From positions 124,001-188,000 of IMG/VR virus record IMGVR_UViG_3300042891_000711: DNA of 64,000 nucleotides; one strand, 5' to 3'. Below are positions 20,398 to 43,214 of the stretch, one piece after another (position 1 is the stretch's first letter; every line of letters starts with the position of its first letter). The notes below the pieces were generated by a model. That model saw nothing but the letters and a program-made list of their open reading frames with translations. It ran no database searches and was not told the DNA's origin. Position numbers and translations under genes: made by a program.

Positions 20398-20428
20398 AGC
20401 TGTTATAGTAAACAATTAGGAGTAACAT

Positions 20429-25580: not shown

Positions 25581-25586
25581 AATAAT

Positions 25587-26694: not shown

Positions 26695-27758
26695 ACAAGA
26701 TATTTTGCGTAACGTCAACTGACTCAGTTGGGTGTACATTTTTAGATTGGAGTATTCACTATCTATCAGGTTCTACTAAATTTTATAATGTTGAATCTGG
26801 CTGGAGTGATTTAGTAACTACTCCTTTAGACTCGTCCAACGCTCACGCACACCCAAAGAATCATCCTAACGGTGTTGAATTAACCAACAAAGTAATAGAC
26901 AAATTAACTAATGTTAGTGCTACAGTACCGCTTTCATTTTATCCTGTTCCAATACACGAAGAACTAGCGGCTAAACAAATAAATCTCGTAATAAATCAAC
27001 CTACTGACTTTTATGATGATAAAATAACACAATATCAACAACATGACTATGCCGACATTTGGCAGCAATTGGCAGTTAATAATATCTCTATTGTTTATAT
27101 TAAATTAACTAGTAATTGTTTATACACCCAATCAGTTAGACAGCTGGATAGAAATGCTCCAAATTTATCCAATCAATTACAAACAACAAAAGAAGTACAA
27201 GCTAACTATTTAAATACATTTTTTAAAGACAGTCAACTATACTGGAATAAACTTGGTCTAACTAATAACTGGGATCACCGTGAATTTATTGCATTAAATA
27301 TTCGTCCCTATTATTACAACGACATTGACAAATATATTGATTTTTCTGCCTCGCATTATTATGTAGATGCTCAAGAATTATGGTACAACGGAAAAAATAC
27401 ACTAATTAATATTATGCAGTATCTAGGTTTAACTGTAGACGCTGGCAGATTAACATCGTGGTTACCTGTATATTATGAATGGCAACAAAAACAATTAGGT
27501 ATTTTAAAATTTAGTTGGAACATCGACCATATATGTAATTGTATCGTTAATAATTATTATTATGATATTAGCTCATATAATTTAGACCTATGGCACGAAG
27601 CAATTATACAACACAATTTAATTTATAAACACAATGTAACATTTAAAGCCTGGGGATTAGAAACATTGCCAACTAATACACAAGAATTACATCTGTTACT
27701 AGAACCAAATATTCACCCGGTGGAAGATGTATATGGCATGTTAAAAGGGCTATCATGA
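26691..27758 (+). CDS. Hypothetical protein, possible sulfotransferase-like fold
   Basis: N-terminal beta strand plus SVGCTFL loop resembling a PAPS-binding loop; AT-rich. Confidence 0.4.
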   Translation: MNKIFCVTSTDSVGCTFLDWSIHYLSGSTKFYNVESGWSDLVTTPLDSSNAHAHPKNHPNGVELTNKVIDKLTNVSATVPLSFYPVPIHEELAAKQINLVINQPTDFYDDKITQYQQHDYADIWQQLAVNNISIVYIKLTSNCLYTQSVRQLDRNAPNLSNQLQTTKEVQANYLNTFFKDSQLYWNKLGLTNNWDHREFIALNIRPYYYNDIDKYIDFSASHYYVDAQELWYNGKNTLINIMQYLGLTVDAGRLTSWLPVYYEWQQKQLGILKFSWNIDHICNCIVNNYYYDISSYNLDLWHEAIIQHNLIYKHNVTFKAWGLETLPTNTQELHLLLEPNIHPVEDVYGMLKGLS

Positions 27759-28741
27759 AAATACTAATCACAGGTGGTGCAGGATTCATTGGACACAATG
27801 TAACTCGCATATTAGAACAGCAAGGTCACGAATGTTATGTCATTGACACCGCAACAGACTATGGCTTTATACCAAAAAAGGAATTAACTTATCTCAAATC
27901 TTCGCGTAAAGAACGTTTTAACTCACGTGTTATACATACTGATATATGTAGCGTTAATCATATCGACAGTATTTTTAGCGCAGTACGTCCAGAGCTAGTA
28001 ATACATCTTGCTAGCTTTCCTAGACAAAAAATAGTCAGTCAGGATCCAATACTTGGGTCAGAAGTAATGACCACTGGATTGATTAATCTGCTGGAAGCCA
28101 GCACACGTTATAACATCAATAAGTTTGTCTACATTAGTTCAAGTATGGTCTACGGTGACTTCAATAATGAATCGTTTGATGGCATCGGTGAATATGTTGA
28201 ATGCAATCCAATTGGGCAGTATGGCATTATGAAATACATGGGCGAGAAACTTGTAGCTGATTATACTCGACGTGTTTGTTTTTCGCACACTATCATTCGT
28301 CCTAGTGCTGTATACGGACCGTGGGACGTTGAAGACAGAGTTGTTAGTAAGTTTATGCTAGCGGCCCTACGTGGAGAAGTATTAAAAGTCAAAGGTGCCA
28401 ATGAAGTTCTGGACTTTACATACGTTGAAGATACTGCCATGGGTATTGCACAGGCCGCACTAAGCGACAATGCCAACAATAAAATTTATAATATAACACG
28501 TTCATCGGACGTAGAATATACACTACTAGATGCTGCTCAGCTTGCTGTTAAGATTGCAGGCAAGGGTAGTATAGAAATTGCAGACCGTGACTTGGCATTT
28601 CCTACACGTGGTAGATTGAATATTATGAATGCAAGAGCAGACTTTGGGTATAATCCCCTAGTTAACGTAGAAGATGGTTTTGCTCGTTATCATGAATGGT
28701 TTACTACATCACCTTTTTGGAACAAACAACTCGCAAAATGA
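27755..28741 (+). CDS. NAD-dependent nucleotide-sugar epimerase/dehydratase
   Basis: ITGGAGFIG, SSSMVYG, YGIMK (YxxxK), VYGP, DFTYVED. Confidence 0.92.
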   Translation: MKILITGGAGFIGHNVTRILEQQGHECYVIDTATDYGFIPKKELTYLKSSRKERFNSRVIHTDICSVNHIDSIFSAVRPELVIHLASFPRQKIVSQDPILGSEVMTTGLINLLEASTRYNINKFVYISSSMVYGDFNNESFDGIGEYVECNPIGQYGIMKYMGEKLVADYTRRVCFSHTIIRPSAVYGPWDVEDRVVSKFMLAALRGEVLKVKGANEVLDFTYVEDTAMGIAQAALSDNANNKIYNITRSSDVEYTLLDAAQLAVKIAGKGSIEIADRDLAFPTRGRLNIMNARADFGYNPLVNVEDGFARYHEWFTTSPFWNKQLAK

Positions 28742-29829
28742 TTCCATTCTTCGGTGTAGATCGTCAATATAAAACAATACGTGAAGAGATACTCGATGTA
28801 ACAGATCTTGTATACTCTAGCGGACAGGTCTTAGACGGACAATATACCAATACGTTTGAACAGACTATAGCCAAACTAACAGAACGCAAGTATGGTGTGG
28901 CTGTTAATAGTTGTACACAGGCATTAGTGTTTGCCCTACGATCAATTGACTTTTATTCCTTATTTCACAAAAACAAAGTATTAATTCCAAGTCAAAGTTT
29001 TGCCGCTACAGTTAATGTTGTATACGAAGCCGGCTTTGAACCTGTGTTCTGTGATGTTGATCCTATCTCAGGATTAATTGATCTTAACAGTATTCCAGTT
29101 AAACCAGATGAAGTTGCAGCTGTTATGTATGTTAACTTGTTTGGCAATATCATCGACTACGATAAATTACAAACGTATGTTACGTTCTTTAATAATCATC
29201 GCATACCTGTAATCGAAGATGCCGCACAATCATTTGGTGCTTACTATCGAGGAGTACCCAGTGGCAAGTTGGGAGACCTTAGTTGTTTAAGTTTTGACCC
29301 AACTAAGAATTTCCCTAACTACGGATCGGGAGGAATGATACTCACAGACGACTACGAATTAGCTGAGCTGTGTATTAATATGCGCGACAACGGCAAGGTG
29401 TCAGAGCATTATACAGTTGGCACTAATAGTAAGATGAGTGAAGTCGATTGTGCGCAGATGCTGGTCAAGTTAAGACACTTTGATGCATGGCAACAGCGTC
29501 GTAAAAACATTGCAGAATATTACACAGAAGAACTAGATGGCCCTGTGCAGATGATTCCTGTAGACCATAATGTTGAACATGCATGGCATAAGTTTGTTAT
29601 ACACTATCCAGAACGTTCGCGTTTATTCTCAGATTTACACTATATGGGTATAGAAACTAAAATACATTATACTGCACCATTGCACATGATGGGTGTTGTC
29701 GGTGGACATGAAGTACTAGTAGGTGCCGAACAGTTTAGTAAAACTTGTTTGAGTTTGCCCATCTATCCAGAGATGACTGATGCAGAAGTTGAAGCAGTTG
29801 TTGATGCTATTAAAGAGTGTACTTGGTAG
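28738..29829 (+). CDS. DegT/DnrJ/EryC1/StrS nucleotide-sugar aminotransferase
   Basis: VNSCTQAL, IEDAAQSFG, SFDPTKN, SLPIYPEM. Confidence 0.92.
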   Translation: MIPFFGVDRQYKTIREEILDVTDLVYSSGQVLDGQYTNTFEQTIAKLTERKYGVAVNSCTQALVFALRSIDFYSLFHKNKVLIPSQSFAATVNVVYEAGFEPVFCDVDPISGLIDLNSIPVKPDEVAAVMYVNLFGNIIDYDKLQTYVTFFNNHRIPVIEDAAQSFGAYYRGVPSGKLGDLSCLSFDPTKNFPNYGSGGMILTDDYELAELCINMRDNGKVSEHYTVGTNSKMSEVDCAQMLVKLRHFDAWQQRRKNIAEYYTEELDGPVQMIPVDHNVEHAWHKFVIHYPERSRLFSDLHYMGIETKIHYTAPLHMMGVVGGHEVLVGAEQFSKTCLSLPIYPEMTDAEVEAVVDAIKECTW

Positions 29830-32428
29830 CGTAATACTGTTTCAACCACGCCCATTCAAACGTCAGCATTAGTTTAGCGTAATCACCAGCAACATCATTA
29901 TAATATTCTAGTGCGTCCTGTGCACCTTGTAAACTCGATTCTGCACAGTTACCTTCAGCTGTTGTTAACCATCTGTCCAATCGATAACGACTTTCGATAC
30001 TGCCAGTGCGTTCGACATCATCTTTAAGTTTAATACACTCTCTAAACGCAGTACGCCATGTTAGCTCAGGTGTAGTATTATAATGCGCTGTAGCACTTAG
30101 TAGAGGCACTACAGCATGTGCTTTGCTCAATGTGAAGTCTAGTCCCGTGTCTGTTGTTTCGATTACTAGGCGTTTGTTATACGCAATTACACCCATGTGT
30201 CCGTACTCTAATCCGTTAACCGGATTCTTACTATGGAATATGTAGTGCTTAGGACCTTGTAAGTAGTCTGGTTGCCAATTCCAATCAAACGCTGTGTTAA
30301 CTTCTAATTTAGCAAACACAGCAAAGAACCAAGGTGTTGTACTAAGTTCAGCGGCGGCTTTGTAAGCGTTAGCTCGACCATCAACATTTTGCACACGTTT
30401 AACTGATCTACGTGTCAGGTCTACGGTACTAATTAAATGTTCATACCAACGTTCTGCATCTGGCTCACCATTGCTGATGTAGATAATATCCAATGCATGT
30501 TCATCGAACATAGGCATTTTAGTAATATAAGGATAATCGTATGCTTGTGTATTGATGGCAGATTTGGCGTCTCTAGGGGCTAAAATATAGCTGTTTCCGG
30601 CTGAAAAACCAACGATTTGACGGTCTTTTGCGTACCAAATGCTGGGATTATACTGTACACCACGATCATAGTTAAAAAAGTATGTAAACGGATGTTTAAA
30701 TTCATGCGACTTAATTGCCGCAATTAAATTGTCACCTTCATACTGTTGTCCGGGGATAGGCAAGCGGGGCACTCGTTGTTCTTCGCAGTAGTTAATAACA
30801 TTAAACCAATCCAACATCTCGAGCTCAACCATTTGCAGTTTAAAACTTTCTACGTGTATGTAGAATGTATCACCACGTGCTTGATTGGCACTAGGAAACA
30901 CGTGTATCATTTCTTTCTGCCAGGGTTCTGGTTGCCAGCTAAAGTCAAAGCGGGCATAATCACATAGACTGCTGATTATCCATACGTGTTCTGTTGAGGC
31001 AGTTGCCATAATACGTTTAAAGGTATCAAGGTAGTTGTCAACATATCGAGTCGATTTAATATCGGGGTGTTTCTTTTGTAGTTGCTCAAGTTGATCATTA
31101 TCATTGCCATGATCCACAAAGTAAATGTCATGCAGGTCGTCTGGTATTATAATACTTTGATCTTGTACAAAGTTTAGGTTTGGAAATTCTTCTAAGCTGT
31201 TAGCCCATGCGGATGTACGTTCAAATTCCCAACGATTAATTAAATAGGTATCACTCCACTTTTGATGTTGTGAACCAAATACATGTGTCATGTAACTTTG
31301 CCACGGTTCAGCATGCCATGCAAAGTTAAAGTCATCGTAGACGTTTTCACTACTGATAACCCAAAACTTACTGGTCTTTGCTCGTGCTACACAACGACGA
31401 ATTGTGTCAATCATTGAATTAACATAGCGTACTCGTTGTACCTGTGGATACTGTTCAACTAATTTTTCATAACGTGCGGCCGAACTAGCATTGCTCCGGT
31501 CAATAAAGAATATATCTAATACTTGTATCACCGGGTTATCGTGTTGTCCTATAGTAGGAATATCTCCAGCAAACTTAACTTCGGTTGCACCCGGCGCAGT
31601 ATAGGTCAGTCCGATACTAGATTGAAACTCTGAGCCAAAATGATAGATGTAGGGAGGATCCTGCGGATGCGGCACCCATCCAAAGTCTACAGTATCTGCA
31701 TTGACTTCTTCTGGTATAGTCCATAAGGTACGATCAGGTAAGGTACGTGCTACCACTACATCAATATATTTTTCTTGTGTAGCACCCGGTACGTGATATT
31801 CAGGACCGCCCACTGCATTCCACACTGTAGGGAATTTATATATATAGGGTTCTTCTGCTGGGTGTGGTACCCAACTAAAGTCAAATGATTCTTTGTCTAT
31901 ATTAGCAGGTACCTGCCAACGACTCATGTCACTGAGTGTGCGAGCAAAGAAATCATCTACAAACTTAACAGCAGTTGCACCAGGTACACGATATTCTGGA
32001 CCACCAATACGCTCCCATCCCCACTTAACAGGGAACTGATATACGTATGGTGGATCCAATGGATCAGGTGCCCATCTTTGATCAATACTGGCGGGATCTA
32101 TGTTATCAGGTACATGCCAATAGTCTAAATTAGGCAGACGATGTGTGTATGTTTCTTTATGGTAGTTGTGTACTTTATCTTGTACAGTATACTTGTTAGC
32201 AAAGTAGGTGCCACCATCCTGTTGCCATTGGTTTGCCCACGTATGTATTTGATGCTGTTCCCAAGGCACTGCACGGAAATTAAAATCAAATCCTGTGTAG
32301 TCATTCTGTCCATCTATGTACCAAAAGAATTTAGTGCGACTTAGTTCAGCCGCTTTGGCTAGTGTATCGGCCGGCAGTTCAAAAGGAAATAAGTTGGGCT
32401 TAGGGCCCTTATAGAATACATCAAACAT
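29810..32428 (-). CDS. Multidomain glycosyltransferase-like protein (tandem GT-A-like domains plus Trp/Pro repeats)
   Basis: Repeated DIFFID/DIYFVD/DIIYIS domains; C-terminal domain paralogous to 45940..46836; three ~62-aa W/P-rich repeats. Confidence 0.55.
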   Translation of the reverse strand: MFDVFYKGPKPNLFPFELPADTLAKAAELSRTKFFWYIDGQNDYTGFDFNFRAVPWEQHQIHTWANQWQQDGGTYFANKYTVQDKVHNYHKETYTHRLPNLDYWHVPDNIDPASIDQRWAPDPLDPPYVYQFPVKWGWERIGGPEYRVPGATAVKFVDDFFARTLSDMSRWQVPANIDKESFDFSWVPHPAEEPYIYKFPTVWNAVGGPEYHVPGATQEKYIDVVVARTLPDRTLWTIPEEVNADTVDFGWVPHPQDPPYIYHFGSEFQSSIGLTYTAPGATEVKFAGDIPTIGQHDNPVIQVLDIFFIDRSNASSAARYEKLVEQYPQVQRVRYVNSMIDTIRRCVARAKTSKFWVISSENVYDDFNFAWHAEPWQSYMTHVFGSQHQKWSDTYLINRWEFERTSAWANSLEEFPNLNFVQDQSIIIPDDLHDIYFVDHGNDNDQLEQLQKKHPDIKSTRYVDNYLDTFKRIMATASTEHVWIISSLCDYARFDFSWQPEPWQKEMIHVFPSANQARGDTFYIHVESFKLQMVELEMLDWFNVINYCEEQRVPRLPIPGQQYEGDNLIAAIKSHEFKHPFTYFFNYDRGVQYNPSIWYAKDRQIVGFSAGNSYILAPRDAKSAINTQAYDYPYITKMPMFDEHALDIIYISNGEPDAERWYEHLISTVDLTRRSVKRVQNVDGRANAYKAAAELSTTPWFFAVFAKLEVNTAFDWNWQPDYLQGPKHYIFHSKNPVNGLEYGHMGVIAYNKRLVIETTDTGLDFTLSKAHAVVPLLSATAHYNTTPELTWRTAFRECIKLKDDVERTGSIESRYRLDRWLTTAEGNCAESSLQGAQDALEYYNDVAGDYAKLMLTFEWAWLKQYYATKYTL
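31570..32119 (-). repeat. Three tandem ~62-aa protein repeats
   Basis: W.(V/I)P..(I/V)....D..W.P.P...PY.Y.F......G..Y..PGAT..K repeated three times. Confidence 0.85.
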
Positions 32429-32855
32429 CTAACTGTTCTACTTCCACTCCCGAAGCCTTAAGGAAATTGACTCCACTATCATCGCGATAACTAGTAGCGT
32501 AGTAAACTCGTTTGATACCACTTTGGTATATGAGCTTGGCACAATCCAAACAAGGACTATGAGTAACAAATAAGTCAGCATCAAGTCCAGACTCAGTGCT
32601 CCTGGCTAGTTTTGCAAGTGCGTTAGTTTCAGCATGTAGGACTTCCGGTTTAGTTTTAATCGTGCCATCGTCAAGTTCATACTCGCAGTTATTATCCCAA
32701 CCAGTAGGCATACCATTGTAGCCAATTGAAATAATTCTGTCGTCTTTAACTACTAGTGCACCAACTTTAAGTCTACGTGCTGTGCTTAGATCACTGTAGA
32801 GATGTGCAGCTCGCATGTGTGCTAGTTTATATTTTGTTTTCATTCTAGTATCCAA
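32421..32855 (-). CDS. dCMP deaminase
   Basis: KVGAL, GYNG, HAETNAL, SPCLDCAK Zn-binding motifs. Confidence 0.93.
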   Translation of the reverse strand: MDTRMKTKYKLAHMRAAHLYSDLSTARRLKVGALVVKDDRIISIGYNGMPTGWDNNCEYELDDGTIKTKPEVLHAETNALAKLARSTESGLDADLFVTHSPCLDCAKLIYQSGIKRVYYATSYRDDSGVNFLKASGVEVEQLDV

Positions 32856-33274
32856 ACTAAATCAGCCAAGGTCTTACTCCATTGATCAATATCATCAAAT
32901 GTAGTAATACGGAAATCATATTCTTCAATGGACAAAGGTTCAAACAATTGATTAGTATCTTCGTAACGACCAGACCGAATAGTATCCATCCAAACCACTA
33001 GATCAGCATCAAATATTTTTCTCAGTTCCCGTGTGGGACAGACAAAATCGCATATGGCAATTATATCTCGTTGCTCAATTGCAGTTGCGATATGTCGCAT
33101 GCGATGTGCTTGTCGTAGTCTACCTTCACTGGTAAAATCCCAATCGTTGGTGGCCTGTCGGACTTCGTCGGCATTAACCCACTCTACAGCAAAGTTATTG
33201 GCTATTTCTTCTGTTAACCGTTCAGCTAACGTAGTTTTACCTGAGCCGGGTAGGCCACAAATTAAGATTTTCAT
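32840..33274 (-). CDS. cysC: Adenylyl-sulfate (APS) kinase-like protein
   Basis: GLPGSGKTTLA P-loop, NADEVR, DFT.EGR.RQ, FVCP, FEP; start ATG 33274. Confidence 0.75.
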   Translation of the reverse strand: MKILICGLPGSGKTTLAERLTEEIANNFAVEWVNADEVRQATNDWDFTSEGRLRQAHRMRHIATAIEQRDIIAICDFVCPTRELRKIFDADLVVWMDTIRSGRYEDTNQLFEPLSIEEYDFRITTFDDIDQWSKTLADLVWILE

Positions 33275-33281
33275 ATTAGTT

Positions 33282-33310
33282 ATTATACAACCATTTTTAA
33301 TGTACGTCAA
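33282..33310 (-). promoter_or_regulatory. sigma70 promoter, probably leaderless cysC mRNA
   Basis: TTGACG-17 nt-TATAAT on - strand, ATG 7 nt downstream. Confidence 0.7.
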
Positions 33311-33352
33311 GTATTTAATATCATGTAGCTGCCCCAAATAATAAATACAAGC

Positions 33353-34594
33353 ATGAATGTACTAATTCTTACACCCGACAGAGTTGGGTCAACCCTGCTA
33401 CAAAGATTGCTTACCGTGTATATGTTAAGAAAAGGGTTTGATAAACCAGTAATTAACCTACATGAGTTAACCAACGGACTAGTACAATATTACAATACTA
33501 CCATAAATCAAACTGTTCTGGGTAAACCCGAAGGTCAAGACTGGGGATACCATCAATCCTTGTCCGAAGTTATTGAATTGCTATCTTCAACAGACCATTA
33601 TAAAACTAGTAGACTAGCACACTATCATATTGTTAATAGACAGGATTCTATTGCCGAACAATTAAAGTTTTATGATTATCTCAATAAGAATTTTTATATA
33701 ATCAGCTGTCGTAGAGAAAATCTATTGGAGCATGCACTAAGCTGGTCAATTAATGCGCATAGTAAAAAATTAAATGTATACAGTCCACACGAAAAGATTA
33801 ATTCATTTTATGATATCTATCGTAACGGTATAGAAGTTCAACGAGATACTATGTATGCTCATTTAAAAAAATATAAAGAATATATCGATTGGTCTGACAG
33901 ATATTTTAACATACAGTCACATTTTTATTATGAAAATGATGTGCCTAAGATTGAAGATTATATTTTAAATTTAGATTTTATGCAAGGGCACGCCAACAAC
34001 TCCTGGCAGGATATGTTTGGGCAAAGCTTCGTCGACTATAATACCTGTCACAAACTTATTCCAGATTTATTGTTGTCTAATAATGTTACTGCCGATACAA
34101 CAAAAATCAGTCGTCCACAGTGGGCGTGGAATTCTGAGTCGCTTAATGAATTAAATTGGAATACTGTTAAAGGGAAAGATTGGCCAGAGTACGATGATGT
34201 AACTGTTGAATCATTTAATAAACTGCCAGCACCTATACAATCAGAACTTACTGAATTTGGCTATAACCCAAACAAGTATTCAGTATCAGTTACTGCTGAT
34301 GTTTACAATTTTTTAAACCAGCATGTTGCACAGTATAAAGACACAGATGACCAACTGAACAAACTAGTACAAGATGGATTCTTAGTAACAGGCATTCCAA
34401 TTAAACTACAGTCGTTCAGTGAAAAGAAATCTATTGTTAGAAACTTTAACGAATGTGTCGATTGGTATAATGAGTGGACTGTGGATAATTCCTATGGAAA
34501 GAAATATTCTGCGGAAGACATAAGTCAATTATGCATCATTGAAGATACTCGATTGACATTGCCTTTAGTGACTGTTAGTAAATTACTTTCATAA
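33353..34594 (+). CDS. Sulfotransferase-like P-loop protein (Stf0-like), inverted relative to neighbours
   Basis: ILTPDRVGSTLL (5'-PSB-like), LHE, RRENLLEHALS (3'-PB-like), FYYE. Confidence 0.55.
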   Translation: MNVLILTPDRVGSTLLQRLLTVYMLRKGFDKPVINLHELTNGLVQYYNTTINQTVLGKPEGQDWGYHQSLSEVIELLSSTDHYKTSRLAHYHIVNRQDSIAEQLKFYDYLNKNFYIISCRRENLLEHALSWSINAHSKKLNVYSPHEKINSFYDIYRNGIEVQRDTMYAHLKKYKEYIDWSDRYFNIQSHFYYENDVPKIEDYILNLDFMQGHANNSWQDMFGQSFVDYNTCHKLIPDLLLSNNVTADTTKISRPQWAWNSESLNELNWNTVKGKDWPEYDDVTVESFNKLPAPIQSELTEFGYNPNKYSVSVTADVYNFLNQHVAQYKDTDDQLNKLVQDGFLVTGIPIKLQSFSEKKSIVRNFNECVDWYNEWTVDNSYGKKYSAEDISQLCIIEDTRLTLPLVTVSKLLS

Positions 34595-35423
34595 GGTCTG
34601 ACACAAAATTAGTTGCAGTAGCTTTGTCATAATGGTGACCATCTCTTGCTAGATCAACCTGTGTCAACTGAATAATATTATTACGAATTGCCGAATCGGT
34701 TAGATGTATGTACTCGTAGTAATCATTATAAAAATCATACGTACTTAACTCTTCTTTAATGTTCACAGGAAGGGAATCAAATTCTAGTTTTGTGCGAGGT
34801 GCAGTGGGCCATGTATCTCCACTAAGTTTTTTCCATTTAATATTGAAAAATTCTTCATTTTCTATACGGTACGCACCAGGAATCATTGAATGAATTAATT
34901 TAGTAGTGGTTACAGCGGTATTAACGGCATCTAAATTTTTATCAAAATTATGTAAATAAACTTTATTATCTAAATCAGTATATGCCAGGCGGCGATTCTC
35001 GTCAATCTTAGTGTCATCTGTGTCTTCAGCTCGTTCAACATAAGTCCACTGGATAATTATACATCGAGGAGTTATAGTTTCTAACAAGCGTAGTACTTTT
35101 CTTGCGATCCAATCATTGCTGGCGCCGTCCATACTAACATTAATACACCGAATGTTAGTTTTATTTTGTAATATGTTTACCCAAGTATGCTCTAATGGGC
35201 TACCCAATCCTACTGTAAAACTATCACCAAAGCACCATATTGCATCGGTTATGTTATCGGGCCATTCACTGTCTCTGAATCCTCGAGAATTGTAATTGTA
35301 TTCAATGGCATAAGGATAAGAATTAAAATGATGTTTATCCGTGCAATATTTCTCAGAATCTATACCAGATTCATTCCATACTTTATGTTGTCTGGTAGTT
35401 AATATAAAATCTGGTAGTATCAA
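34575..35423 (-). CDS. SGNH/GDSL-family hydrolase or acyltransferase
   Basis: YNSRGFRD, FGDSFTVG, GASND, ARDGHHY. Confidence 0.75.
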   Translation of the reverse strand: MILPDFILTTRQHKVWNESGIDSEKYCTDKHHFNSYPYAIEYNYNSRGFRDSEWPDNITDAIWCFGDSFTVGLGSPLEHTWVNILQNKTNIRCINVSMDGASNDWIARKVLRLLETITPRCIIIQWTYVERAEDTDDTKIDENRRLAYTDLDNKVYLHNFDKNLDAVNTAVTTTKLIHSMIPGAYRIENEEFFNIKWKKLSGDTWPTAPRTKLEFDSLPVNIKEELSTYDFYNDYYEYIHLTDSAIRNNIIQLTQVDLARDGHHYDKATATNFVSDLMKVIY

Positions 35424-36910
35424 GATAAAACTCGAATTCCGTATAACTGCTCAAAGCGGTCAGCATCTGCACGATCGTTAACCATCGGTTCACCACGTAC
35501 ATTTAAACTTGTATTAAGTAACATAGGACAACCTGTCCAAGTATACCACAAGCACAATAGTTCACGTATACCACTGCCATCTCTGGGCACAGTCTGTACA
35601 CGACTTGTACCATCTACATGTATTATAGCAGGAAATTCATCGGGTCGCAGGCACTTTGCAGTTGTTTGCATGTATCTGCTTGTGGCAAATCCGTTGGGCA
35701 TTTCAAAATACTCATCAACAAACTCCTCTAGTATTATAGGAGCGAATGGTCTAAACTTCTGTCTACGTTTAATTTGATTAACTGCATCTTTAATGTCAGG
35801 GCCACGTGGGTCGGCTAATAAACTACGATTGCCCAATGCTCTAGGGCCAAACTCTGCACGGCCGCTAGCAACGCCAACGATCTTATTGGTCATTAGCTCA
35901 GAGACAACATCGGTGACAGGATAACTGCCACTAATATTATGGCCAAGAAAAGCATTATTCCAATTAAGTTTACCCCCGTGTGCCAATGCCGCCGCTCCAA
36001 GGCTGCTACCAGCATCACCAGGATTAGGCATAATCCATATTTCATCAAAGTATTCTCCTAGATCTCTATTAGCACTGCAATTAAGAGCAACTCCGCCAGC
36101 ATATACTAAATTACTATTAGGTGCTAGCTTCTTTGCCTTGTACATAATATTATGTATCAATTGTTCTGTTAATGTCTGTGCCGCATTAGCAATTTCAAAA
36201 TCATTCCAACGAGCTCGCATGTCATTATCGGGTAGACCAATATGTAGATTGTGTTTTAATGTTAGATTAAACTCATGGTCAACTAACCAAGTTGACAGTT
36301 GATCACTTAGACGTGTGGTATTTTGTTTTGCCCAACCTGCCATACCCATCAAGATGTATTCTTCATCTAGTGGTTTAAGTCCAACTTCTTTAGTAAATGC
36401 ACTGTACATCAAGCCGATGCTGTGTGGATATAGTTGTCGCCATACTCGGGTGTATTCAGCACGGCCATTGACATACTTAGCTGACCATATGCTTATGGTG
36501 TCCCACTCGCCGATGGCATCGATTACCACAACTGTTGCGCTGTCAAACGGGCTAGTTTGAAAGCCGGCCGCTGCATGACTTAAATGATGATTGTATGTAT
36601 TAATCGGAGTAGAACTCAACCACGGAGCGACTTTGTGTATCATGTTGCGCACACTCCAGCCTTTAGTTAGTTCGCTGTACTGGCCAGCATAGAGTTGACG
36701 TGTCTTTTTAACCCAGGGTCTTTCGTAGTAGGCAATTAGATCAGGTTCGCCATGATTAAATATGCAATCTTTAAACAGTTCACTGTTTAAATTTGGATCG
36801 TGTTTAATCTTGCTGTAACGTTCAGCATGGCCCGCAAAGACAATGTCATCGCCTTTGATTAATGTAATTGCTGCGTCATGAAACCCAGCCGAGATGCCTA
36901 ATATGTTCAT
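35420..36910 (-). CDS. Carbamoyltransferase (NodU/CmcH/TobZ family)
   Basis: GISAGFHDAA, HHLSHAA, GGVALN, EFGPRALGNRS, RPFAP, HVDGTSRVQTV, LNTSLN. Confidence 0.95.
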   Translation of the reverse strand: MNILGISAGFHDAAITLIKGDDIVFAGHAERYSKIKHDPNLNSELFKDCIFNHGEPDLIAYYERPWVKKTRQLYAGQYSELTKGWSVRNMIHKVAPWLSSTPINTYNHHLSHAAAGFQTSPFDSATVVVIDAIGEWDTISIWSAKYVNGRAEYTRVWRQLYPHSIGLMYSAFTKEVGLKPLDEEYILMGMAGWAKQNTTRLSDQLSTWLVDHEFNLTLKHNLHIGLPDNDMRARWNDFEIANAAQTLTEQLIHNIMYKAKKLAPNSNLVYAGGVALNCSANRDLGEYFDEIWIMPNPGDAGSSLGAAALAHGGKLNWNNAFLGHNISGSYPVTDVVSELMTNKIVGVASGRAEFGPRALGNRSLLADPRGPDIKDAVNQIKRRQKFRPFAPIILEEFVDEYFEMPNGFATSRYMQTTAKCLRPDEFPAIIHVDGTSRVQTVPRDGSGIRELLCLWYTWTGCPMLLNTSLNVRGEPMVNDRADADRFEQLYGIRVLS

Positions 36911-37424
36911 TGATTACTTCCGCTATTCGTTGATGCCCTAGTTCCAGTGGATGTCCACCCGGTCCTTTTGGACAATCACCCATCCATTCTACTATGCCTT
37001 GGTTTGGCCAGCCTAGCCAACATGATAATCCTGTGTCAGTTGCTTGTTGTTGTATATCAAAGGTACTTACAAACACGTGTGGTATATTGTGTAAATAGGC
37101 ATCTAATAACTTAGTCTGTACTATAAATTTTTTATAAGCCCATGCAGTGTCCCAGTCAGCAAATACACTATTGACTACAGGACCATATTTTTTATAACTA
37201 GCCGATGTTAAATGTTTGCCAGGCAATTCAATACGGTTAGGACTAGTCCATGCTACGATTACATAATCAACTGAATGTGTGTCGACATAGTCAACTGTTG
37301 ATCTAAGTATGTAATCATTACTAGCACCAGGAACACTAATGTTTACAGTGCCACTGATTAAATCAGGCCATGCAACTTCGCTTTCTTCACCTGCGGTAAA
37401 ACTATCGCCATTGACTAAAATCAT
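36876..37424 (-). CDS. SGNH-family protein
   Basis: NGDSFTAG, GASNDYI, WTSPNR, GGHPLELGH. Confidence 0.75.
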   Translation of the reverse strand: MILVNGDSFTAGEESEVAWPDLISGTVNISVPGASNDYILRSTVDYVDTHSVDYVIVAWTSPNRIELPGKHLTSASYKKYGPVVNSVFADWDTAWAYKKFIVQTKLLDAYLHNIPHVFVSTFDIQQQATDTGLSCWLGWPNQGIVEWMGDCPKGPGGHPLELGHQRIAEVINEHIRHLGWVS

Positions 37425-37522
37425 TTATAGATAAAAGGATCGCGTTTACGTAATTCTTTTAATTTTTTACGATAGTTTATTTCTAATCGAATTCTACTGT
37501 ATAAATTCTTTAACCAGTTCAT
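37421..37522 (-). CDS. 33-aa basic peptide MNWLKNLYSRIRLEINYRKKLKELRKRDPFIYK (not in ORF track)
   Basis: Manual translation; GGAG 7 nt upstream of the ATG; TGA overlaps ATG of next gene (ATGA). Confidence 0.75.
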   Translation of the reverse strand: MNWLKNLYSRIRLEINYRKKLKELRKRDPFIYK

Positions 37523-38321
37523 GATAATTCTCCCGAATATATTTTGCAGCATCAATATGCGCAGGTTCCAACGGATGTGTTGTGCCTATAGGATATTTAA
37601 AGTCTCTTGCCCAGGTATAAAATCCTTGATTATTTGGGAAAGTAATCCAACGATCGAAGTCAATTTGATTGTATAATAATGCTATACTTTCATCATTCAT
37701 TAGATGCATACAGTTATTTAATAGTGCTTCATCCACCATTGAAAATATATAGGGTATCTTTCTTAACTGTAGATATTGCTGTAACATAATTATTTCTGTC
37801 AGCGAATTATAAGTTTCCCAATACTGTTCTTTTGATGCACCGATGTGCTTATAAAATGTTTTGGCAAATTCAGTTACGCCTGAACGTTTTGCTCGATTTA
37901 AATGTGTAACGTGATGTTCGAGTATATCAGGATCATCTGTTTTAAATTCGCGTTTAATATCTTCTATATCATCAATGATTGACCAAGAAGTAAGGTTGTA
38001 CCAATTACCCCAACGTTCTTCTGTATCATAATTAAATCTAAATTCGTATCTACCAGGAAAGGTCCATGTCACAATCACTAATCCAACGTCTTGTAATTTT
38101 TCACAGGCGTTCATCGTAGTCCGACGAATAGCACTGTTACTAAATCCGGGATATGCTGCACATTCATAGTGCATACCAAAGTTTTGGGCTAAGAGTGCCG
38201 GGTAAGTACTTAAACTGACTATCTGATGGGCAGGGTCAGGGTTAGTAGTATCTCTATGAGTAACACTATCGGTTAGTTCACTGCCATAAGTAAAACTATC
38301 ACCGCCTGATAGTAAAATCAT
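37494..38321 (-). CDS. SGNH-family protein
   Basis: GGDSFTYGSEL, GFSNSAI, WTFPGR, THPLEPAH. Confidence 0.75.
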   Translation of the reverse strand: MILLSGGDSFTYGSELTDSVTHRDTTNPDPAHQIVSLSTYPALLAQNFGMHYECAAYPGFSNSAIRRTTMNACEKLQDVGLVIVTWTFPGRYEFRFNYDTEERWGNWYNLTSWSIIDDIEDIKREFKTDDPDILEHHVTHLNRAKRSGVTEFAKTFYKHIGASKEQYWETYNSLTEIIMLQQYLQLRKIPYIFSMVDEALLNNCMHLMNDESIALLYNQIDFDRWITFPNNQGFYTWARDFKYPIGTTHPLEPAHIDAAKYIRENYHELVKEFIQ

Positions 38322-38322
38322 C

Positions 38323-39408
38323 TTAGGATATCCTTAGGATCTGTTGATCTCGATAGTCACTGTCTGACCAATCGTATGTATAAGTTACAGTAGCACTACT
38401 AGTTCGTATGCTGTGTACATTTAAGTGTAGGCCGAGCTGTGCCCATATAACGTTATAGTCTGTTGATCCAAAACTTCTAATTAAATCAACTTGTCCGACC
38501 TGTGGGTGACCAATTGTTAATGTTTTATCTTCTGGATCGAATCCATTGTCAATTAACCATGTTCTAAACGCTTCAAGACTTCGTATTTGCCAATGATATT
38601 TGCCCGGGTCATTGGCCCATTCAATATCAAAGTCTCCGGCGGCTTCTGTTTGCGAACGCAATGTTGTAGTAGTCAATTCATCTATTCTATGCCCTGCTGC
38701 GCCTTCATCTCGAAATACTTCATAATGATGTTTGCCCACTGCTTTGTTGACTCCAGCGAATACACCACCCAGTGGTCGGTTTATGCTGTTAATTCCAAAC
38801 AATTCAAAATCATCTGCATCTAATACAAATCTTGGTGCATTTAACCAACACATTAGCTGACTTGGTCTTCGCCATTCTGGTGCGTGCGCGGCTTTGCGCA
38901 TGCTCAACACCAGCGATTCGTATTCATGACATAATAAATTTAATTGTCGAATGTGCCATTTAGTTTGATTATCAGCACGGTTGTAATATTCTGTCATATG
39001 GCCGCTAGTGCCCTGCAGGTCTTCAAAATATCGATGCAATTGATTTAATTTATCATGTATAATCATACCACCTGGTAAATCATCACCTACCGGTCCGGGC
39101 ATTATTGTATTAGCCACTGTGAAATGATCATCAATTTGATAGCCAATATTAGCTTGATTAATTGCAGCAATTGACTGATTCATTTGATCAGTTATATACT
39201 CTGCATTACGTTCAGATTCGATAAAGCCGTGAAAACAATAATTCTTTTCTAAGTGATAGTTATTTTCTACTAGATGATTTAATGCTGATAACCATTTACG
39301 ACTAAGTGAGCTGTCAAATACATCAATGTATACAGTTAACAGTTCGTTGGTTTTATTGTTTTTTAAATCAATTTCAATTTGATCAAGCAATGTTGTTGTA
39401 CCATTCAT
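38323..39408 (-). CDS. Hypothetical protein in the radical SAM cluster
   Basis: 361 aa; LNQLH.YFE, LN.LCHEYE, VGKH His/Glu motifs suggest metal binding. Confidence 0.65.
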   Translation of the reverse strand: MNGTTTLLDQIEIDLKNNKTNELLTVYIDVFDSSLSRKWLSALNHLVENNYHLEKNYCFHGFIESERNAEYITDQMNQSIAAINQANIGYQIDDHFTVANTIMPGPVGDDLPGGMIIHDKLNQLHRYFEDLQGTSGHMTEYYNRADNQTKWHIRQLNLLCHEYESLVLSMRKAAHAPEWRRPSQLMCWLNAPRFVLDADDFELFGINSINRPLGGVFAGVNKAVGKHHYEVFRDEGAAGHRIDELTTTTLRSQTEAAGDFDIEWANDPGKYHWQIRSLEAFRTWLIDNGFDPEDKTLTIGHPQVGQVDLIRSFGSTDYNVIWAQLGLHLNVHSIRTSSATVTYTYDWSDSDYRDQQILRIS

Positions 39409-40672
39409 ATACAGCCGGTCTCTCTTTTAATATGTCTGCTAGCGTATAGGTATCTTTACGTATACTTTCTAATTGTAGCACACGAGCCTTACCTTTTGCA
39501 AGACTTACTTTATATGTATCTGGCCATTGCTCATCAAACGTTGGTCGTGATTTTAACTGCACAAGTATATCCTGCATAGCACCAGAAGTTTGTGGTATTA
39601 GTTCATCTAGCCAAGGATGTAGTAAGTCGCGTGGTAGTGCCAGCGGACTAAGGATGATGTCAGGGCTAAAGCTAAAAATAACTTTAGCCAAGACATCTAC
39701 GTTTTCTTTTTCAGCAAGCTGGGTAATGTTTGTGACTTCAAACATGCCGGGCAGTGTGAGAGTAAAGTCAATTCGCATTTGCCTTCTATGACTTGCTGTT
39801 CTAACTCCTTCACGGAAATTTGCAAGCCATGTATTGTAGTCAAGTCCTGTTCTAATATATTCTCCAATTCGACCAGTTCCGTCGAGGCTTGCACAGATTT
39901 GCCAGTCACGTAGCCCAGATAGAATATCCCTATAGAGATTGATGCCACGATAGTCGACGCGGCTAAGATTTGTATTGTATCTTGCGTAAACATTTTTACC
40001 ATATCCTAGTTCAACAATGCGTTGCATATAACGCCAATGTTGTTCATACATCAAGGGTTCACCACCCACCCAATATACTTCTTCTACTTGATGATCTTCA
40101 ACTGCTTGAGCAAACTCCTGTTCAATTTGACTATCTTGAAATTTTGATATTTCATTTCTTACTTCGGGCCGCATCCAATTGTTCTTTGGATTATGCCAGT
40201 TAATCATGTCATATTGTCTTTGTTCAGACTCCCATGCACTGCTTAACATATCACCACACATACGACATTTGAAATTGCATAAGTTACTAAAGCGATAATC
40301 CCAGCTTACAGGACGAAGTGTAGTAGTTCCGTCTGGTTGGGTATTCTCTAGTACTTGCAAATACTTATGGCCAAACAGACTATCAAAATAACTACGGTAA
40401 ATGCTAGTGTTAAGTAATTTGTCATTGCACACTTCGCACTCAGGTAGTGTTTCACCTGCCATCATACGGCGACGTACACTTTTCATGTGTTCGCTATTCC
40501 AATGTTCTTCAAGTGTAATAGGAATATATGTGCCAGTACCAGCTTTAGTATCTATGTACTGTTCAAAGTTCTGTGCGGGCTCGCGACTAGCACAGCACAT
40601 ACGTCGCTCAGTTTGCGGACTAAGATATGTATGTACCCACGGTGCTAGACAAAGTGTACTAGGCTTCGACAT
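39383..40672 (-). CDS. Twitch/SPASM-domain radical SAM protein
   Basis: N-terminal CLAPW...MCC...CEVC; NLCNFKCRMC; GGEPL; YNTN. Confidence 0.9.
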   Translation of the reverse strand: MSKPSTLCLAPWVHTYLSPQTERRMCCASREPAQNFEQYIDTKAGTGTYIPITLEEHWNSEHMKSVRRRMMAGETLPECEVCNDKLLNTSIYRSYFDSLFGHKYLQVLENTQPDGTTTLRPVSWDYRFSNLCNFKCRMCGDMLSSAWESEQRQYDMINWHNPKNNWMRPEVRNEISKFQDSQIEQEFAQAVEDHQVEEVYWVGGEPLMYEQHWRYMQRIVELGYGKNVYARYNTNLSRVDYRGINLYRDILSGLRDWQICASLDGTGRIGEYIRTGLDYNTWLANFREGVRTASHRRQMRIDFTLTLPGMFEVTNITQLAEKENVDVLAKVIFSFSPDIILSPLALPRDLLHPWLDELIPQTSGAMQDILVQLKSRPTFDEQWPDTYKVSLAKGKARVLQLESIRKDTYTLADILKERPAVYEWYNNIA

Positions 40673-43214
40673 AGCCCATTGCTACAGCAATCTCTCTATG
40701 AGTAGTTAACATACTCTGCTCACGGTATGCGTCTGTCTGTTGCATCTTATGTAGGAATTCTGTGCCATCACTACCACCACCATTTTCGATAAATTGAATT
40801 ATCTTATCAATTTCAACTCGATGCTTAACATTAAATGGATAAGCAGATAATCTATCAATTACTAACTTTTGTGCATCCGTTGTCATTCGATTGATACACA
40901 TAACACTCGGGTCATGCAACATATTAAAATGCACCATATCAAATTGTTGAGTATTAACCCAGTCACATAGCTCGGGCAGATAATAAACATTTTGTATGTT
41001 AACGGTCATGCAAACCTGTGTCTGAATTAAATTAGTTTTCATGGCATTAAATTTTATAACATTAGTTTTTACTTCTTCCCACACAGCACCATAGCGTTCG
41101 TATTCAAAACGTGCTTCGGTATTATCAATACTAACTGCAATTTCAACATTTCTAAATTTACTCCATAAGGCAACTTCTTCGTCGCTTGGGTATACTGTAC
41201 CGTTAGTATTATAGTGTATATCAATACGTTTACTATATCCATGCTCAACTGCATAGCGTAATAGTTTAAAATGCTCTTCGATTAGGAATGGTTCGCCGCC
41301 TGTGAATTCAAAGTACTTAATGTTTGGTAATAGTTCTTTTAAATTTTCCCAAAATACTTCGCTTTCCCTCGGCCAGGTTCCTTCTTGTAGGAACATATAT
41401 GCACCGTGTTGTTTACGGTCATATCCCTGCACGTCTTTATATTTTCTAGCTTCGTAATCAATTTCTTCTTTAGCCCATTTACTGCTACTCCATGATCCGC
41501 ATATACGACATTTAAGATTACAGATGTTGCCTAGTTTAAGATCAATGAACCAAAGTTGATCCGGTGTATCATTACGCCAATCAACTATTGGATAGAATTC
41601 TTTAAGTCTAATTCTGCTGTTGATACGTTTACTAACTATGCCCGCATCTTCTTCACTCCAGCAACGATTGCATGTACTAGGCTTTTCACCTCGACGGAAT
41701 TGTTGGCGCAGGTCCTGCATGTATTCACTATTGTAAATTTCAGCCAAGGAGCTTTCTCTAAGTTTATACGGAGTACCATCGGGTTTAGTAATTTCATCTT
41801 TAGCCAGACAACACGGACGGGCTGTGCCGACTGGACTTGCTTCAATACTGACCCACGGCAACATACAGATATTATCATGTGTCTTATTGATTCCCAAATG
41901 GTCTCTCAACTCTTGATATTCTGGAAACACTTCTTCGAATGTTTCTTTTCTAAACTCATCGGTTTGATCATTTATCTTAAAAAATTCTTTTAATAAATGG
42001 CTCTTATCGTCTTGATACATAAATGTGATAATAGCTCGATAACCCGATATAGCTCGTTGTAAATGATCCTGTGGGTCAAGCCAAGCAATATGTTCTTCAA
42101 CACGTTGCTTAATTCTATCTTTAAACTGAATTGGTAATACATCGATTCGATCACGTTCTGGACTTTGTAGAATGTTAACATTCCAATCCATTGCTTTAAT
42201 TAAGCCAAGTTCAACCCATTCTTTATGAAATTCAGTTAAATGCCAAGCATTAAGTATACTAACTGTACTGCTGACATAAAAGTCAACTTTAGGACAAATT
42301 TCAATCATTTTGCGTCGATTTTCTACTGTTTCTGCCCAGTCTGTGCCCTTGCGGATGTATTCTCCGCGAAGATATGAATCATCTAAACTAGCACCCACAC
42401 TTACTACATCAAACAGTTTCCAATATTCAAATACCATCTTATCTTTAAGACGTATGTGACTGAAGTTTGTGTTGTAGATTAACCTAACATGGAACATTTC
42501 ACGCTTAACCAGTTCTTCTAATATGCGATAATGTTCTTCCATGATTAATGGCTCGCCGCCGGCAAAGTAAATCTGTTCTAGATAGGGAATGTGTTCCTGC
42601 ATCTGTTCCCACATGTCATCTTTATTTTTACCTGCAAACATAATCTGCGGATGATTTAATTTACCGAATAGTTTAGTTTCTTCTGCAAACCAACTACTGC
42701 TGAATAAACTACCACAAGTACGGCAACTAAAGTTACATAGATTACTAAAACGTACATCATAGTAGCGTAGTTTAAAGTCATCTAAACTACCGTCGGCATT
42801 AGTTTTATCTGCTAAGGCAATATGATGTCCAAAGTTCTTATTTTGACTGTTGCGCATCGAAAAGAATCCGTTGTCTTCTTGTTCGTAACAACGTGTACAT
42901 TCTTTACTGGGTTTATCCTCTAACATATTTAGACGCATCTGTTTGTATGGGGTTCCATTCCATACTTCTGCCATGGTATTCTCTTTGAAGTTACCAATCG
43001 GCAAATGCATTTCACCTAAACAACATGGATATGCACGACCATCGGGAATTCCATGCATGTGCGTCCATGGTATCATACAGAAGTGCTTGCTTTCTATTAG
43101 TTTATATGTTTGATCTTCTGTTAACTCATCTTCATGTATATACACAGGTTTACGTGTATTGTAATTGTGATTTTTATGATGTACAGTTAATTTTTTGCTT
43201 GGCTCATCGCTCAT
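40659..43214 (-). CDS. Tandem double Twitch/SPASM radical SAM protein
   Basis: Two full modules: CMIPW..PCC/CNFSCRTC/GGEPL and CMLPW..PCC/CNLKCRIC/GGEPF. Confidence 0.9.
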   Translation of the reverse strand: MSDEPSKKLTVHHKNHNYNTRKPVYIHEDELTEDQTYKLIESKHFCMIPWTHMHGIPDGRAYPCCLGEMHLPIGNFKENTMAEVWNGTPYKQMRLNMLEDKPSKECTRCYEQEDNGFFSMRNSQNKNFGHHIALADKTNADGSLDDFKLRYYDVRFSNLCNFSCRTCGSLFSSSWFAEETKLFGKLNHPQIMFAGKNKDDMWEQMQEHIPYLEQIYFAGGEPLIMEEHYRILEELVKREMFHVRLIYNTNFSHIRLKDKMVFEYWKLFDVVSVGASLDDSYLRGEYIRKGTDWAETVENRRKMIEICPKVDFYVSSTVSILNAWHLTEFHKEWVELGLIKAMDWNVNILQSPERDRIDVLPIQFKDRIKQRVEEHIAWLDPQDHLQRAISGYRAIITFMYQDDKSHLLKEFFKINDQTDEFRKETFEEVFPEYQELRDHLGINKTHDNICMLPWVSIEASPVGTARPCCLAKDEITKPDGTPYKLRESSLAEIYNSEYMQDLRQQFRRGEKPSTCNRCWSEEDAGIVSKRINSRIRLKEFYPIVDWRNDTPDQLWFIDLKLGNICNLKCRICGSWSSSKWAKEEIDYEARKYKDVQGYDRKQHGAYMFLQEGTWPRESEVFWENLKELLPNIKYFEFTGGEPFLIEEHFKLLRYAVEHGYSKRIDIHYNTNGTVYPSDEEVALWSKFRNVEIAVSIDNTEARFEYERYGAVWEEVKTNVIKFNAMKTNLIQTQVCMTVNIQNVYYLPELCDWVNTQQFDMVHFNMLHDPSVMCINRMTTDAQKLVIDRLSAYPFNVKHRVEIDKIIQFIENGGGSDGTEFLHKMQQTDAYREQSMLTTHREIAVAMGYVEA

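What the first reader, a model, noticed from the sequence alone, without database searches (positions are those of the whole stretch)
34157..34835. Shared ~35-aa module in two unrelated, convergent enzymes
Seen: the sulfotransferase-like protein contains WNTVKGKDWP...FNKLPAPIQSEL (34157-34250, +). The SGNH protein contains WKKLSGDTWP...FDSLPVNIKEEL (about 34745-34835, -). The consensus is W-x2-h-x-G-x2-WP-x8/9-F-x2-LP-x2-I-x2-EL, apparently inserted within otherwise unrelated folds. Inference: a small mobile docking or targeting domain that recruits tailoring enzymes to a common scaffold or substrate.
Basis: partly seen in the sequence, partly recalled or inferred. Interest (0 to 1): 0.62.

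Follow-up and report, generated by a model that had tools for sequence, protein, structure and literature searches.

The report
Mobile 40-residue module in phage enzymes
Two neighbouring, structurally unrelated enzymes of an uncultured jumbo phage share a real 40-residue helical module; the same undescribed module is inserted or fused into at least eight enzyme families of this phage group, but its function has not been tested.

Summary
Gene A (33353-34594, +) has a sulfotransferase-like fold and gene B (34575-35423, -) has an SGNH fold. They share only one stretch of about 40 residues, W-x2-h-K/S-G-x2-W-P ... L-P-x2-I-x2-E-L/I. The pairwise BLASTP E-value is 5e-4, and the comparison of the two family profiles gives E 1.4e-15.

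The predicted secondary structure of the module is the same in both proteins: helix, W-P loop, short helix, then a helix that starts at L-P. No Pfam, PHROG, NCBIfam or PDB sequence family covers it.

A module profile found 203 representatives among 1.84 billion proteins. With the module masked, the 150 listed fall into at least eight unrelated groups:
- families A and B;
- radical SAM proteins, with tandem copies;
- two methyltransferase types, with the module at the N or C terminus;
- DUF6071 proteins;
- an ADI-like family, supported only weakly;
- a 275-residue family with a G-G-K motif near its N terminus.

Within family A only one subclade carries the module. Within family B it sits at two different sites, and many orthologues lack it. 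Three complete 340-352 kb relatives have no copy; other relatives have up to five.

So this is a mobile accessory mini-domain that some orthologues of A and B lack. Docking or shared substrate recognition is the most plausible role, but it is inferred, not shown.

The parts
33353..34594 (+). Gene A, 413 aa (P0001): sulfotransferase-like enzyme that carries the module as an internal insertion
34145..34267 (+). Module copy in A: HMM match aa 265-305, core motif W269-L300 at 34157-34252
   Evidence: Model helices are 266-272, 285-289 and 293-302, with low-confidence linkers on both sides. More distant A orthologues lack this segment.
34575..35423 (-). Gene B, 282 aa (P0002/P0122): SGNH-fold hydrolase or acyltransferase that carries the module between the beta-strand at 175-180 and the D261-x-x-H264 loop
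34722..34847 (-). Module copy in B: HMM match aa 193-234, core motif W197-L227 at 34743-34835
   Evidence: Model helices are 190-200, 212-216 and 220-228, pLDDT 93-96. Other B orthologues carry the module at a different site or lack it.
34575..34594 (.). 20-nt overlap of the convergent 3' ends of genes A and B
   Evidence: Coordinates. Adjacent A and B genes, with overlapping or abutting ends, recur in many related loci.
32840..33337 (-). APS-kinase-like P-loop kinase next to A; possible supplier of PAPS
   Evidence: Pfam APS_kinase E 1.1e-11. NCBIfam adenylyl-sulfate kinase models match below their cut-offs. The same neighbour occurs in L097 and L004.
35420..36910 (-). NodU/CmcH-type carbamoyltransferase downstream of B, in conserved synteny
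   Evidence: Pfam Carbam_trans_N and Carbam_trans_C, E 3e-38 and 1e-47. PHROG 1601. Same gene order in L097.
36876..38321 (-). Two further SGNH/DUF6071-like genes (36876-37424 and 37494-38321) that do not carry the module
   Evidence: Weak Pfam DUF6071 and Lipase_GDSL_2 hits. No module hit in the contig-wide scan. A DUF6071 protein from elsewhere (P0321) does carry the module.

Best explanation
The shared stretch is a previously undescribed helical mini-domain of about 35-45 residues, probably folding on its own: a helix ending in K/S-G, a W-P loop, a short helix, then a helix that starts at L-P and carries I-x2-E-L/I. In one clade of uncultured aquatic jumbo phages (genomes of about 340-350 kb) it has been inserted or fused repeatedly into enzymes of unrelated folds.

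Shown:
- The module is homologous between A and B.
- It occurs in at least eight unrelated protein contexts and at different positions.
- Some orthologues of A and of B lack it.
- It sits at two different sites in the B family.
- Whole, complete genomes of the clade lack it.

Inferred:
- Because orthologues and whole genomes do without it, it is probably not needed for catalysis and is an accessory part. No enzyme was assayed.
- It most likely gives different tailoring enzymes (sulfotransferase-like, SGNH, methyltransferases, radical SAM, ADI-like) one common recognition function. That would mean binding the same partner, such as a shared carrier, substrate feature or scaffold. It would work like dockerins, RiPP recognition elements or peripheral-subunit-binding domains, without being a member of any of those families.
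- The conserved residues are mainly hydrophobic or Gly/Pro (W, L, W-P, F, L-P, I, L, F). They look like fold determinants, so any binding surface is probably formed by variable, lineage-specific residues.
For: Homology: hhalign E 1.4e-15, and only this region aligns between the full family profiles.

Same secondary-structure pattern in both AF2 models.

Spread: 203 representatives at E<=1e-3 in 1.84 billion proteins. With the module masked, the 150 listed split into unrelated clusters. Pfam labels are Radical_SAM, Methyltransf_24, MTS, DUF6071 and a weak ADI match. The motif is visible in each cluster.

Mobility and dispensability:
- A orthologues at or below 50% identity carry a short variable linker instead.
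- B orthologues carry the module after 'QWSYxHRRE', or after 'IIHSxIP', or not at all.
- Three complete or near-complete genomes (95-100% by CheckV), G002, G004 and G005, have no copy, while G001 and G003 have 4-5.

Protein-level selection rather than DNA copying: there is no DNA repeat, and synonymous codons differ at conserved residues.

Weak hint of co-variation: modules of A and B from the same contig are slightly more alike than cross-contig pairs (29.9% against 27.7% identity, permutation p 0.003). The effect is concentrated in the two residues between G and W-P.

Context is a conserved tailoring island: DegT aminotransferase, APS kinase, A, B, carbamoyltransferase, DUF6071.
Against: No partner is known. 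The A+B complex prediction gave no verdict. A phyletic profile over 10 genomes found no gene that tracks the module. Within-genome similarity of modules is not raised across those 10 genomes (p 0.48), so the co-variation may only reflect lineage-level subtypes. I could not read model coordinates, so neither the superposition of the two copies nor their position relative to the active sites was checked. Autonomous folding is inferred from the conservation pattern, the terminal and tandem occurrences and the flexible linkers in A; it was not tested. Small proteins that seem to consist of modules alone come from contigs of about 1 kb and may be fragments.
Confidence: 0.55

Rival explanations
1. 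The module acts in cis as a substrate lid. It sits beside each active site and recognises a chemical feature common to the substrates of all these enzymes, rather than docking to a separate protein.
For: Both independent insertion sites in the SGNH family follow beta-strands: after the strand at B residues 121-126 and after the strand at 175-180. In alpha/beta folds the C-terminal strand ends form the catalytic face (general knowledge). The module in B is modelled with pLDDT 93-96 and the whole model has pTM 0.91. The insertion in A lies just before the highly conserved 341-359 stretch.
Against: In methyltransferases the module is at the extreme N or C terminus, and in radical SAM proteins it is tandem. 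In A it hangs on low-confidence linkers. That looks like an independent domain rather than a fitted lid.
Confidence: 0.22
2. The module is the footprint of a selfish DNA element that inserts in frame, in the manner of Rickettsia palindromic elements. It would be tolerated at surface sites and have no function for the enzymes.
For: Patchy presence and absence among orthologues, several insertion sites in one family, 0-5 copies per genome, and dispersal over unrelated genes.
Against: There is no nucleotide-level repeat or palindrome between the copies. The copies are only about 27-37% identical as protein, yet the same residues (W, G, W-P, L-P, I, E) are kept across deep divergence while synonymous sites differ. 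That indicates long purifying selection on the peptide. The origin of the insertions could still have been of this kind.
Confidence: 0.1
3. The module is a homotypic oligomerisation element: modules bind each other and assemble the tailoring enzymes into a complex.
For: Several module-bearing enzymes usually occur in one genome, tandem copies exist, and A and B are conserved neighbours.
Against: G010, a record only 55% complete, shows one module-bearing protein. In the 20 kb loci L033-L036 only B carries the module, although the full records of the G003 and G006 genomes hold further copies. The A+B prediction gave no verdict, which counts neither way. There is no direct evidence.
Confidence: 0.1
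4. The similarity is chance or convergence on a short motif.
For: The pairwise identity is only 27% over 44 residues, E 5e-4.
Against: The profile-profile E-value is 1.4e-15. Database-wide hits reach E down to 9e-12 in 1.84 billion proteins. The secondary-structure pattern is the same in both models.
Confidence: 0.03

Closest known systems
Dockerin modules of cellulosomal enzymes
   Same: A small module appended to catalytically unrelated enzymes. It is not needed for catalysis and serves a shared recruitment function. This is the closest analogy to the proposed role.
   Different: Dockerins are about 70 residues with two Ca-binding repeats and sit at protein termini. They bind a known cohesin. 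The module here has no such repeats, is often inserted inside a fold, and has no identified partner. Pfam reports no dockerin hit on any module-bearing protein.
RiPP recognition element (PqqD-like RRE)
   Same: A recognition domain shared by radical SAM enzymes, methyltransferases and other tailoring enzymes of one pathway. The enzyme set here is reminiscent of that: radical SAM/SPASM genes, a CgnD-like SGNH protein and a carbamoyltransferase.
   Different: The RRE is a winged helix-turn-helix of about 85-90 residues with a three-stranded sheet (established knowledge). The module is 35-45 residues and all-helical in both models. There is no PqqD Pfam hit and no precursor peptide was identified.
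Helical mini-domains that bind proteins (PSBD, UBA, and the UBM of DNA polymerase iota)
   Same: Similar size, a helix-loop-helix build and flexible linkers. The second half of the module, F-x2-L-P-x2-I-x2-E-I, resembles the L-P core of the UBM.
   Different: The best PDB sequence match is the Pol iota UBM at E 0.049 over 14 residues, which is not significant. The W-x2-L-K-G-x2-W-P half has no counterpart there. The module's structure could not be compared on its own.
Rickettsia palindromic elements (in-frame mobile insertions)
   Same: Peptide segments of 30-50 residues scattered into unrelated proteins at sites that tolerate them.
   Different: Those elements are recognisable DNA repeats. 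Here there is no DNA similarity between copies, and the peptide is conserved across deep divergence.
Host enzymes: Stf0/SULT-type sulfotransferases (A) and SGNH hydrolases such as CgnD and TesA (B)
   Different: Neither protein reaches any Pfam, NCBIfam or PHROG cut-off. Only about 190-220 of A's 413 residues align to solved sulfotransferases. None of the solved relatives matched the module profile in the PDB sequence search.

Membership tests
Sulfotransferase fold (protein A) | P-loop-like alpha/beta fold shared with PAPS-dependent sulfotransferases | tested here: met
Sulfotransferase fold (protein A) | 5'-phosphosulfate-binding loop and 3'-phosphate-binding R...S motif | tested here: inconclusive
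   T7-P8-x-R10-V-G-S-T14 and R121, N123, S130 are invariant in 62 homologues. Equating them with the PSB and PB motifs rests on recall of the family, not on a residue-level structural alignment.
Sulfotransferase fold (protein A) | Match to a curated sulfotransferase sequence model | tested here: not met
   No Pfam, PHROG or NCBIfam sulfotransferase hit.
SGNH/GDSL hydrolases (protein B) | SGNH flavodoxin-like fold | tested here: met
SGNH/GDSL hydrolases (protein B) | Block I G-D-S, block II Gly, block V D-x-x-H | tested here: met
   G66-D67-S68, N95/S97/G100, D261 and H264 are invariant in 66 homologues.
SGNH/GDSL hydrolases (protein B) | Block III G-x-N-D | tested here: inconclusive
   No G-x-N-D is evident after the strand at residues 121-126. 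W126, S127 and R131 are conserved there instead.
Ubiquitin-binding motif UBM (module) | Significant sequence match to UBM, including the L-P core with its flanking helices | tested here: not met
   Best PDB hit is the Pol iota UBM at E 0.049, covering 14 residues only.
PqqD-like RRE (module) | Winged helix of about 85-90 residues with three beta-strands, and a PqqD family match | tested here: not met
   The module is 35-45 residues and all-helical. No PqqD hit appears in any Pfam scan.
Dockerin (module) | Duplicated Ca-binding loop-helix repeats, and a cohesin partner | tested here: not met
   No dockerin Pfam hit. The consensus has no duplicated acidic loop. No partner gene was found.
In-frame mobile DNA repeat (RPE-like) | Nucleotide-level repeat or palindrome shared by the copies | tested here: not met
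   The two coding stretches share only 12-nt chance matches. Synonymous codons differ at identical residues.
Promiscuous accessory protein domain (general kind) | The same homologous segment in proteins that are otherwise unrelated, at varying positions, with orthologues that lack it | tested here: met

The most novel reading that the evidence does not exclude
The module is the recognition handle of a new recruitment system specific to these jumbo phages. Sulfotransferase-like, SGNH, methyltransferase, radical SAM and ADI-like enzymes would all be brought to one carrier-bound substrate or scaffold, whether a peptide, a glycan carrier or an assembly platform. That would be a compact 40-residue functional analogue of the RRE or of dockerin, with lineage-specific subtypes (W..LKG.DWP against Y..VKD.SWP.C) that co-evolve with their partner.
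Probability: 0.25. Interest if true: 0.8.

Novelty: new variant of a known kind. Interest (0 to 1): 0.6.

Why it matters
Small domains shared by unrelated enzymes usually mark enzymes that act on one substrate or within one complex. This module would then serve as a cheap sequence tag for finding the members of an unknown tailoring pathway in a large, abundant and wholly uncultured group of aquatic jumbo phages. Most of their genes have no annotation. The module also offers a clean natural example of domain insertion: one enzyme family carries the same module at two different sites or lacks it altogether. If a partner exists, the module is a compact docking part of about 40 residues that might be reused in protein engineering.

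Tried and rejected
- Complex prediction of A+B (full length, own alignments) gave 'no answer', score 0.00. It counts neither for nor against binding.
I used the family A alignment instead.
- I ran a phyletic profile for a partner gene using nine related phage records fetched whole, plus the window's own contig. No orthologous group is present in all module-positive genomes and absent from all module-negative ones. The best candidate is a B12-binding radical SAM protein (window 15241-16773), found in 4 of 5 positive and 0 of 5 negative genomes, and it is missing from the complete positive genome G001. The genomes are very divergent (only 25 groups occur in all ten), so the test has little power.
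- Within-genome similarity of modules is not above between-genome similarity in those ten genomes (p 0.48). The A/B same-contig excess (p 0.003) is therefore treated only as a weak hint at the lineage level. The A/B pairs were matched by equal longest-contig length, which is a proxy.
- A DNA inverted repeat or recent gene conversion was rejected.
- ESM Atlas feature search with the module gave scores of 0.83, below the useful range.
- tblastn of A and of B against 50,697 GenBank phage records found no match. blastn of the locus matched only an 86-nt piece of a carbamoyltransferase gene.
- The PDB sequence-profile search found nothing significant.
- Two full-text literature searches found nothing on this module or gene set.
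- Hits to eukaryote-type repeat proteins (P0253 with SEA domains, P0285, P0341, P0326, P0263, P0298, P0342) match only half of the motif, repeatedly. I set them aside as spurious and did not pursue them.
- The upstream 'H-x-h-h-P' similarity in the full-length hhalign was not followed up and may be chance.
- I could not superpose the two modelled modules or search a fold library with the module alone.

Full report
**Where the window lies.** The window is positions 124001-188000 of a 218.9 kb IMG/VR viral contig that CheckV rates 62% complete. GC content is about 38%. Relatives in IMG/VR reach 340-352 kb, and one of them has direct terminal repeats. The window therefore comes from an uncultured jumbo phage. 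Neither protein of interest matches any of 50,697 GenBank phage records.

**Checking the observation.**
- Gene A (33353-34594, +, 413 aa) and gene B (34575-35423, -, 282 aa) are convergent, and their 3' ends overlap by 20 nt.
- The motif lies at A residues 269-300 (window 34157-34252) and B residues 197-227 (window 34743-34835).
- A strict pattern for the motif hits only these two places in all six frames of the window.
- BLASTP aligns only this stretch, E 5e-4.
- Each protein has more than 1600 homologue clusters, all from metagenomes.
- The motif is conserved within the close homologues of each protein, and the two family consensus sequences resemble each other more than the two window copies do.
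- Profile against profile gives probability 98.6%, E 1.4e-15 over 36 columns.
- With full-length family profiles only this region aligns, E 1.6e-7.
- There is no nucleotide-level inverted repeat between the two coding stretches.

**The two host proteins.**
- The AF2 models are confident: A has pLDDT 88 and pTM 0.86; B has pLDDT 95 and pTM 0.91.
- A has an invariant P-loop-like T-P-x-R-V-G-S-T and an R...S pair.
- A's neighbour is an APS-kinase-like gene.
- Neither protein reaches any Pfam, PHROG or NCBIfam cut-off.

**Anatomy of the module.** Both models give the same pattern: a helix ending in K/S-G, a loop holding W-P, a short helix, then a helix that begins at L-P. In A the helices are 266-272, 285-289 and 293-302. 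In B they are 190-200, 212-216 and 220-228. In A the module is flanked by low-confidence linkers. In B it is modelled with high confidence. The conserved positions are mostly hydrophobic or Gly/Pro, with a few polar ones (N, K, D, E). That is the pattern of a small fold's core, not of a catalytic site.

**Distribution beyond A and B.**
- A profile of 77 module sequences found 203 representatives at E<=1e-3 among 1.84 billion proteins, the best at 9e-12.
- After masking the module, the 150 listed proteins split into unrelated clusters.
- Besides families A and B, these clusters are:
  - a 275-residue family with a G-G-K motif near its N terminus, the largest cluster, with no Pfam match;
  - a family of 340-400 residues with a weak arginine-deiminase-like match, module near residue 100-145;
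  - Methyltransf_24 proteins with the module at the C terminus;
  - an MTS methyltransferase with the module at the N terminus;
  - a DUF6071 protein;
  - radical SAM proteins with two tandem copies of a Cys-containing variant;
  - several small groups.
- All of these are unnamed metagenome proteins.
- Some eukaryote-type repeat proteins match only half of the motif and were set aside as spurious.
- No Pfam, PHROG, NCBIfam or PDB sequence family covers the module.
- The best PDB hit is the L-P core of the DNA polymerase iota ubiquitin-binding motif at E 0.049. It is a lead only.

**Evidence for mobility.**
- I fetched 80 IMG/VR loci with family A homologues.
- In family A only the subclade at least 52% identical to the window protein has the module. 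More distant orthologues carry a shorter, variable linker between the same conserved anchors.
- In family B the module occupies two different sites.
  - In the window's lineage it follows 'IIHSxIP'.
  - In another lineage it follows 'QWSYxHRRE', about 40 residues earlier.
  - Conserved anchors lie between the two sites, so this is not an alignment artefact.
  - Many B orthologues have no module at all.
- Whole-record scans give the following counts:

| Record | Completeness (CheckV) | Module-bearing ORFs |
|---|---|---|
| G000 (own contig) | 62% | 2 |
| G001 | 100% | 4-5 |
| G003 | 95% | 4-5 |
| G006 | 76% | 2 |
| G009 | 66% | 4 |
| G010 | 55% | 1 |
| G002, G004, G005 | 98-100% | 0 |
| G007 | 79% | 0 |
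| G008 | 67% | 0 |

- Two subtypes follow lineage rather than host enzyme: W..LKG.DWP in the window's lineage and Y..VKD.SWP.C elsewhere.

**What this implies for function.**
- Orthologues and whole genomes do without the module, so it is probably an accessory part rather than a piece of the catalytic machinery. No enzyme was assayed.
- It tolerates internal, terminal and tandem placement, which suggests a self-contained domain.
- Its conserved residues are kept while synonymous sites differ, so the peptide is under selection. It is not a recently copied piece of DNA.
- It decorates enzymes that add or remove small groups. In the window these sit in a conserved island: sugar epimerase/dehydratase, DegT aminotransferase, APS kinase, A, B, carbamoyltransferase, two DUF6071-like genes, then four radical SAM/SPASM genes.

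A close rival is a substrate lid acting in cis. Both B insertion sites follow beta-strands, which is where alpha/beta enzymes build their active-site face.

**Tests of the docking idea that gave nothing.**
- The A+B complex prediction returned no verdict.
- A phyletic profile over ten genomes found no gene that tracks the module.
- A small excess of similarity between the A and B modules of the same contig (p 0.003) was not matched by any within-genome excess over the ten genomes (p 0.48).

The function therefore remains inferred.

**Novelty and score.** The module itself appears to be undescribed. The kind of thing it is, a small accessory domain shared by unrelated enzymes, is well known. 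I rate it a new variant of a known kind, with interest 0.6. 

Noticed in passing
window 29810-32428 (-): An 872-aa protein with no Pfam, PHROG or NCBIfam match carries a repeated motif of the form W-x-P-x-P-x2-P-P-Y-I-Y-x-F-P, with variants, about six times. The copies are spaced by similar segments that look like repeated domains.
   Followed up: partly
window 39383-45977 (-): Four consecutive radical SAM genes of 429, 851, 450 and 475 aa. In the first, the SPASM domain precedes the radical SAM core. The 851-aa protein looks like a fusion of two SPASM plus radical SAM units. None of the four carries the module.
   Followed up: partly
window 27755-38321, and L097: A conserved tailoring island: NAD-dependent sugar epimerase/dehydratase, DegT/EryC1 aminotransferase, APS-kinase-like gene, sulfotransferase-like A, SGNH B, NodU-type carbamoyltransferase and DUF6071-like genes. 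Much of the gene order recurs in a phage whose A protein is about 55% identical. The product of the island is unknown.
   Followed up: partly
window 25048-26420 (+) and 32421-32855 (-): Nucleotide-metabolism genes flank the island: dihydrofolate reductase, thymidylate synthase and dCMP deaminase.
   Followed up: no
window 15241-16773 (+): A B12-binding radical SAM protein of 510 aa. Its orthologues occur in 4 of 5 module-positive genomes and in none of 5 module-negative genomes. In G003 one copy lies next to two module-bearing genes.
   Followed up: partly
G000 contig 179299-192420 (-), i.e. from window 55299 to beyond the window's end: A single open frame of about 4374 aa appears in the six-frame scan of the contig. 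It was not examined.
   Followed up: no
P0312, P0327, P0358 (radical SAM proteins from other metagenome contigs): Their two tandem module copies are a Cys-bearing variant (W-P-E/D-C ... E-C, in most copies), giving up to four Cys in total. These might bind a metal or an auxiliary cluster. NCBIfam gives a weak 'twitch domain radical SAM' match on the N-terminal core.
   Followed up: no
L053 and L054 (B orthologues): At the window-type insertion site these proteins carry a stretch with W-W-N-x-R-x3-W-P-E-x-L-P that the module HMM does not score. It may be a degenerate remnant of the module.
   Followed up: no
window 18929-21700 (+): An AAA ATPase (MoxR-like) followed by a DUF2201 metallopeptidase/VWA protein, a gene pair known from cellular genomes.
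   Followed up: no
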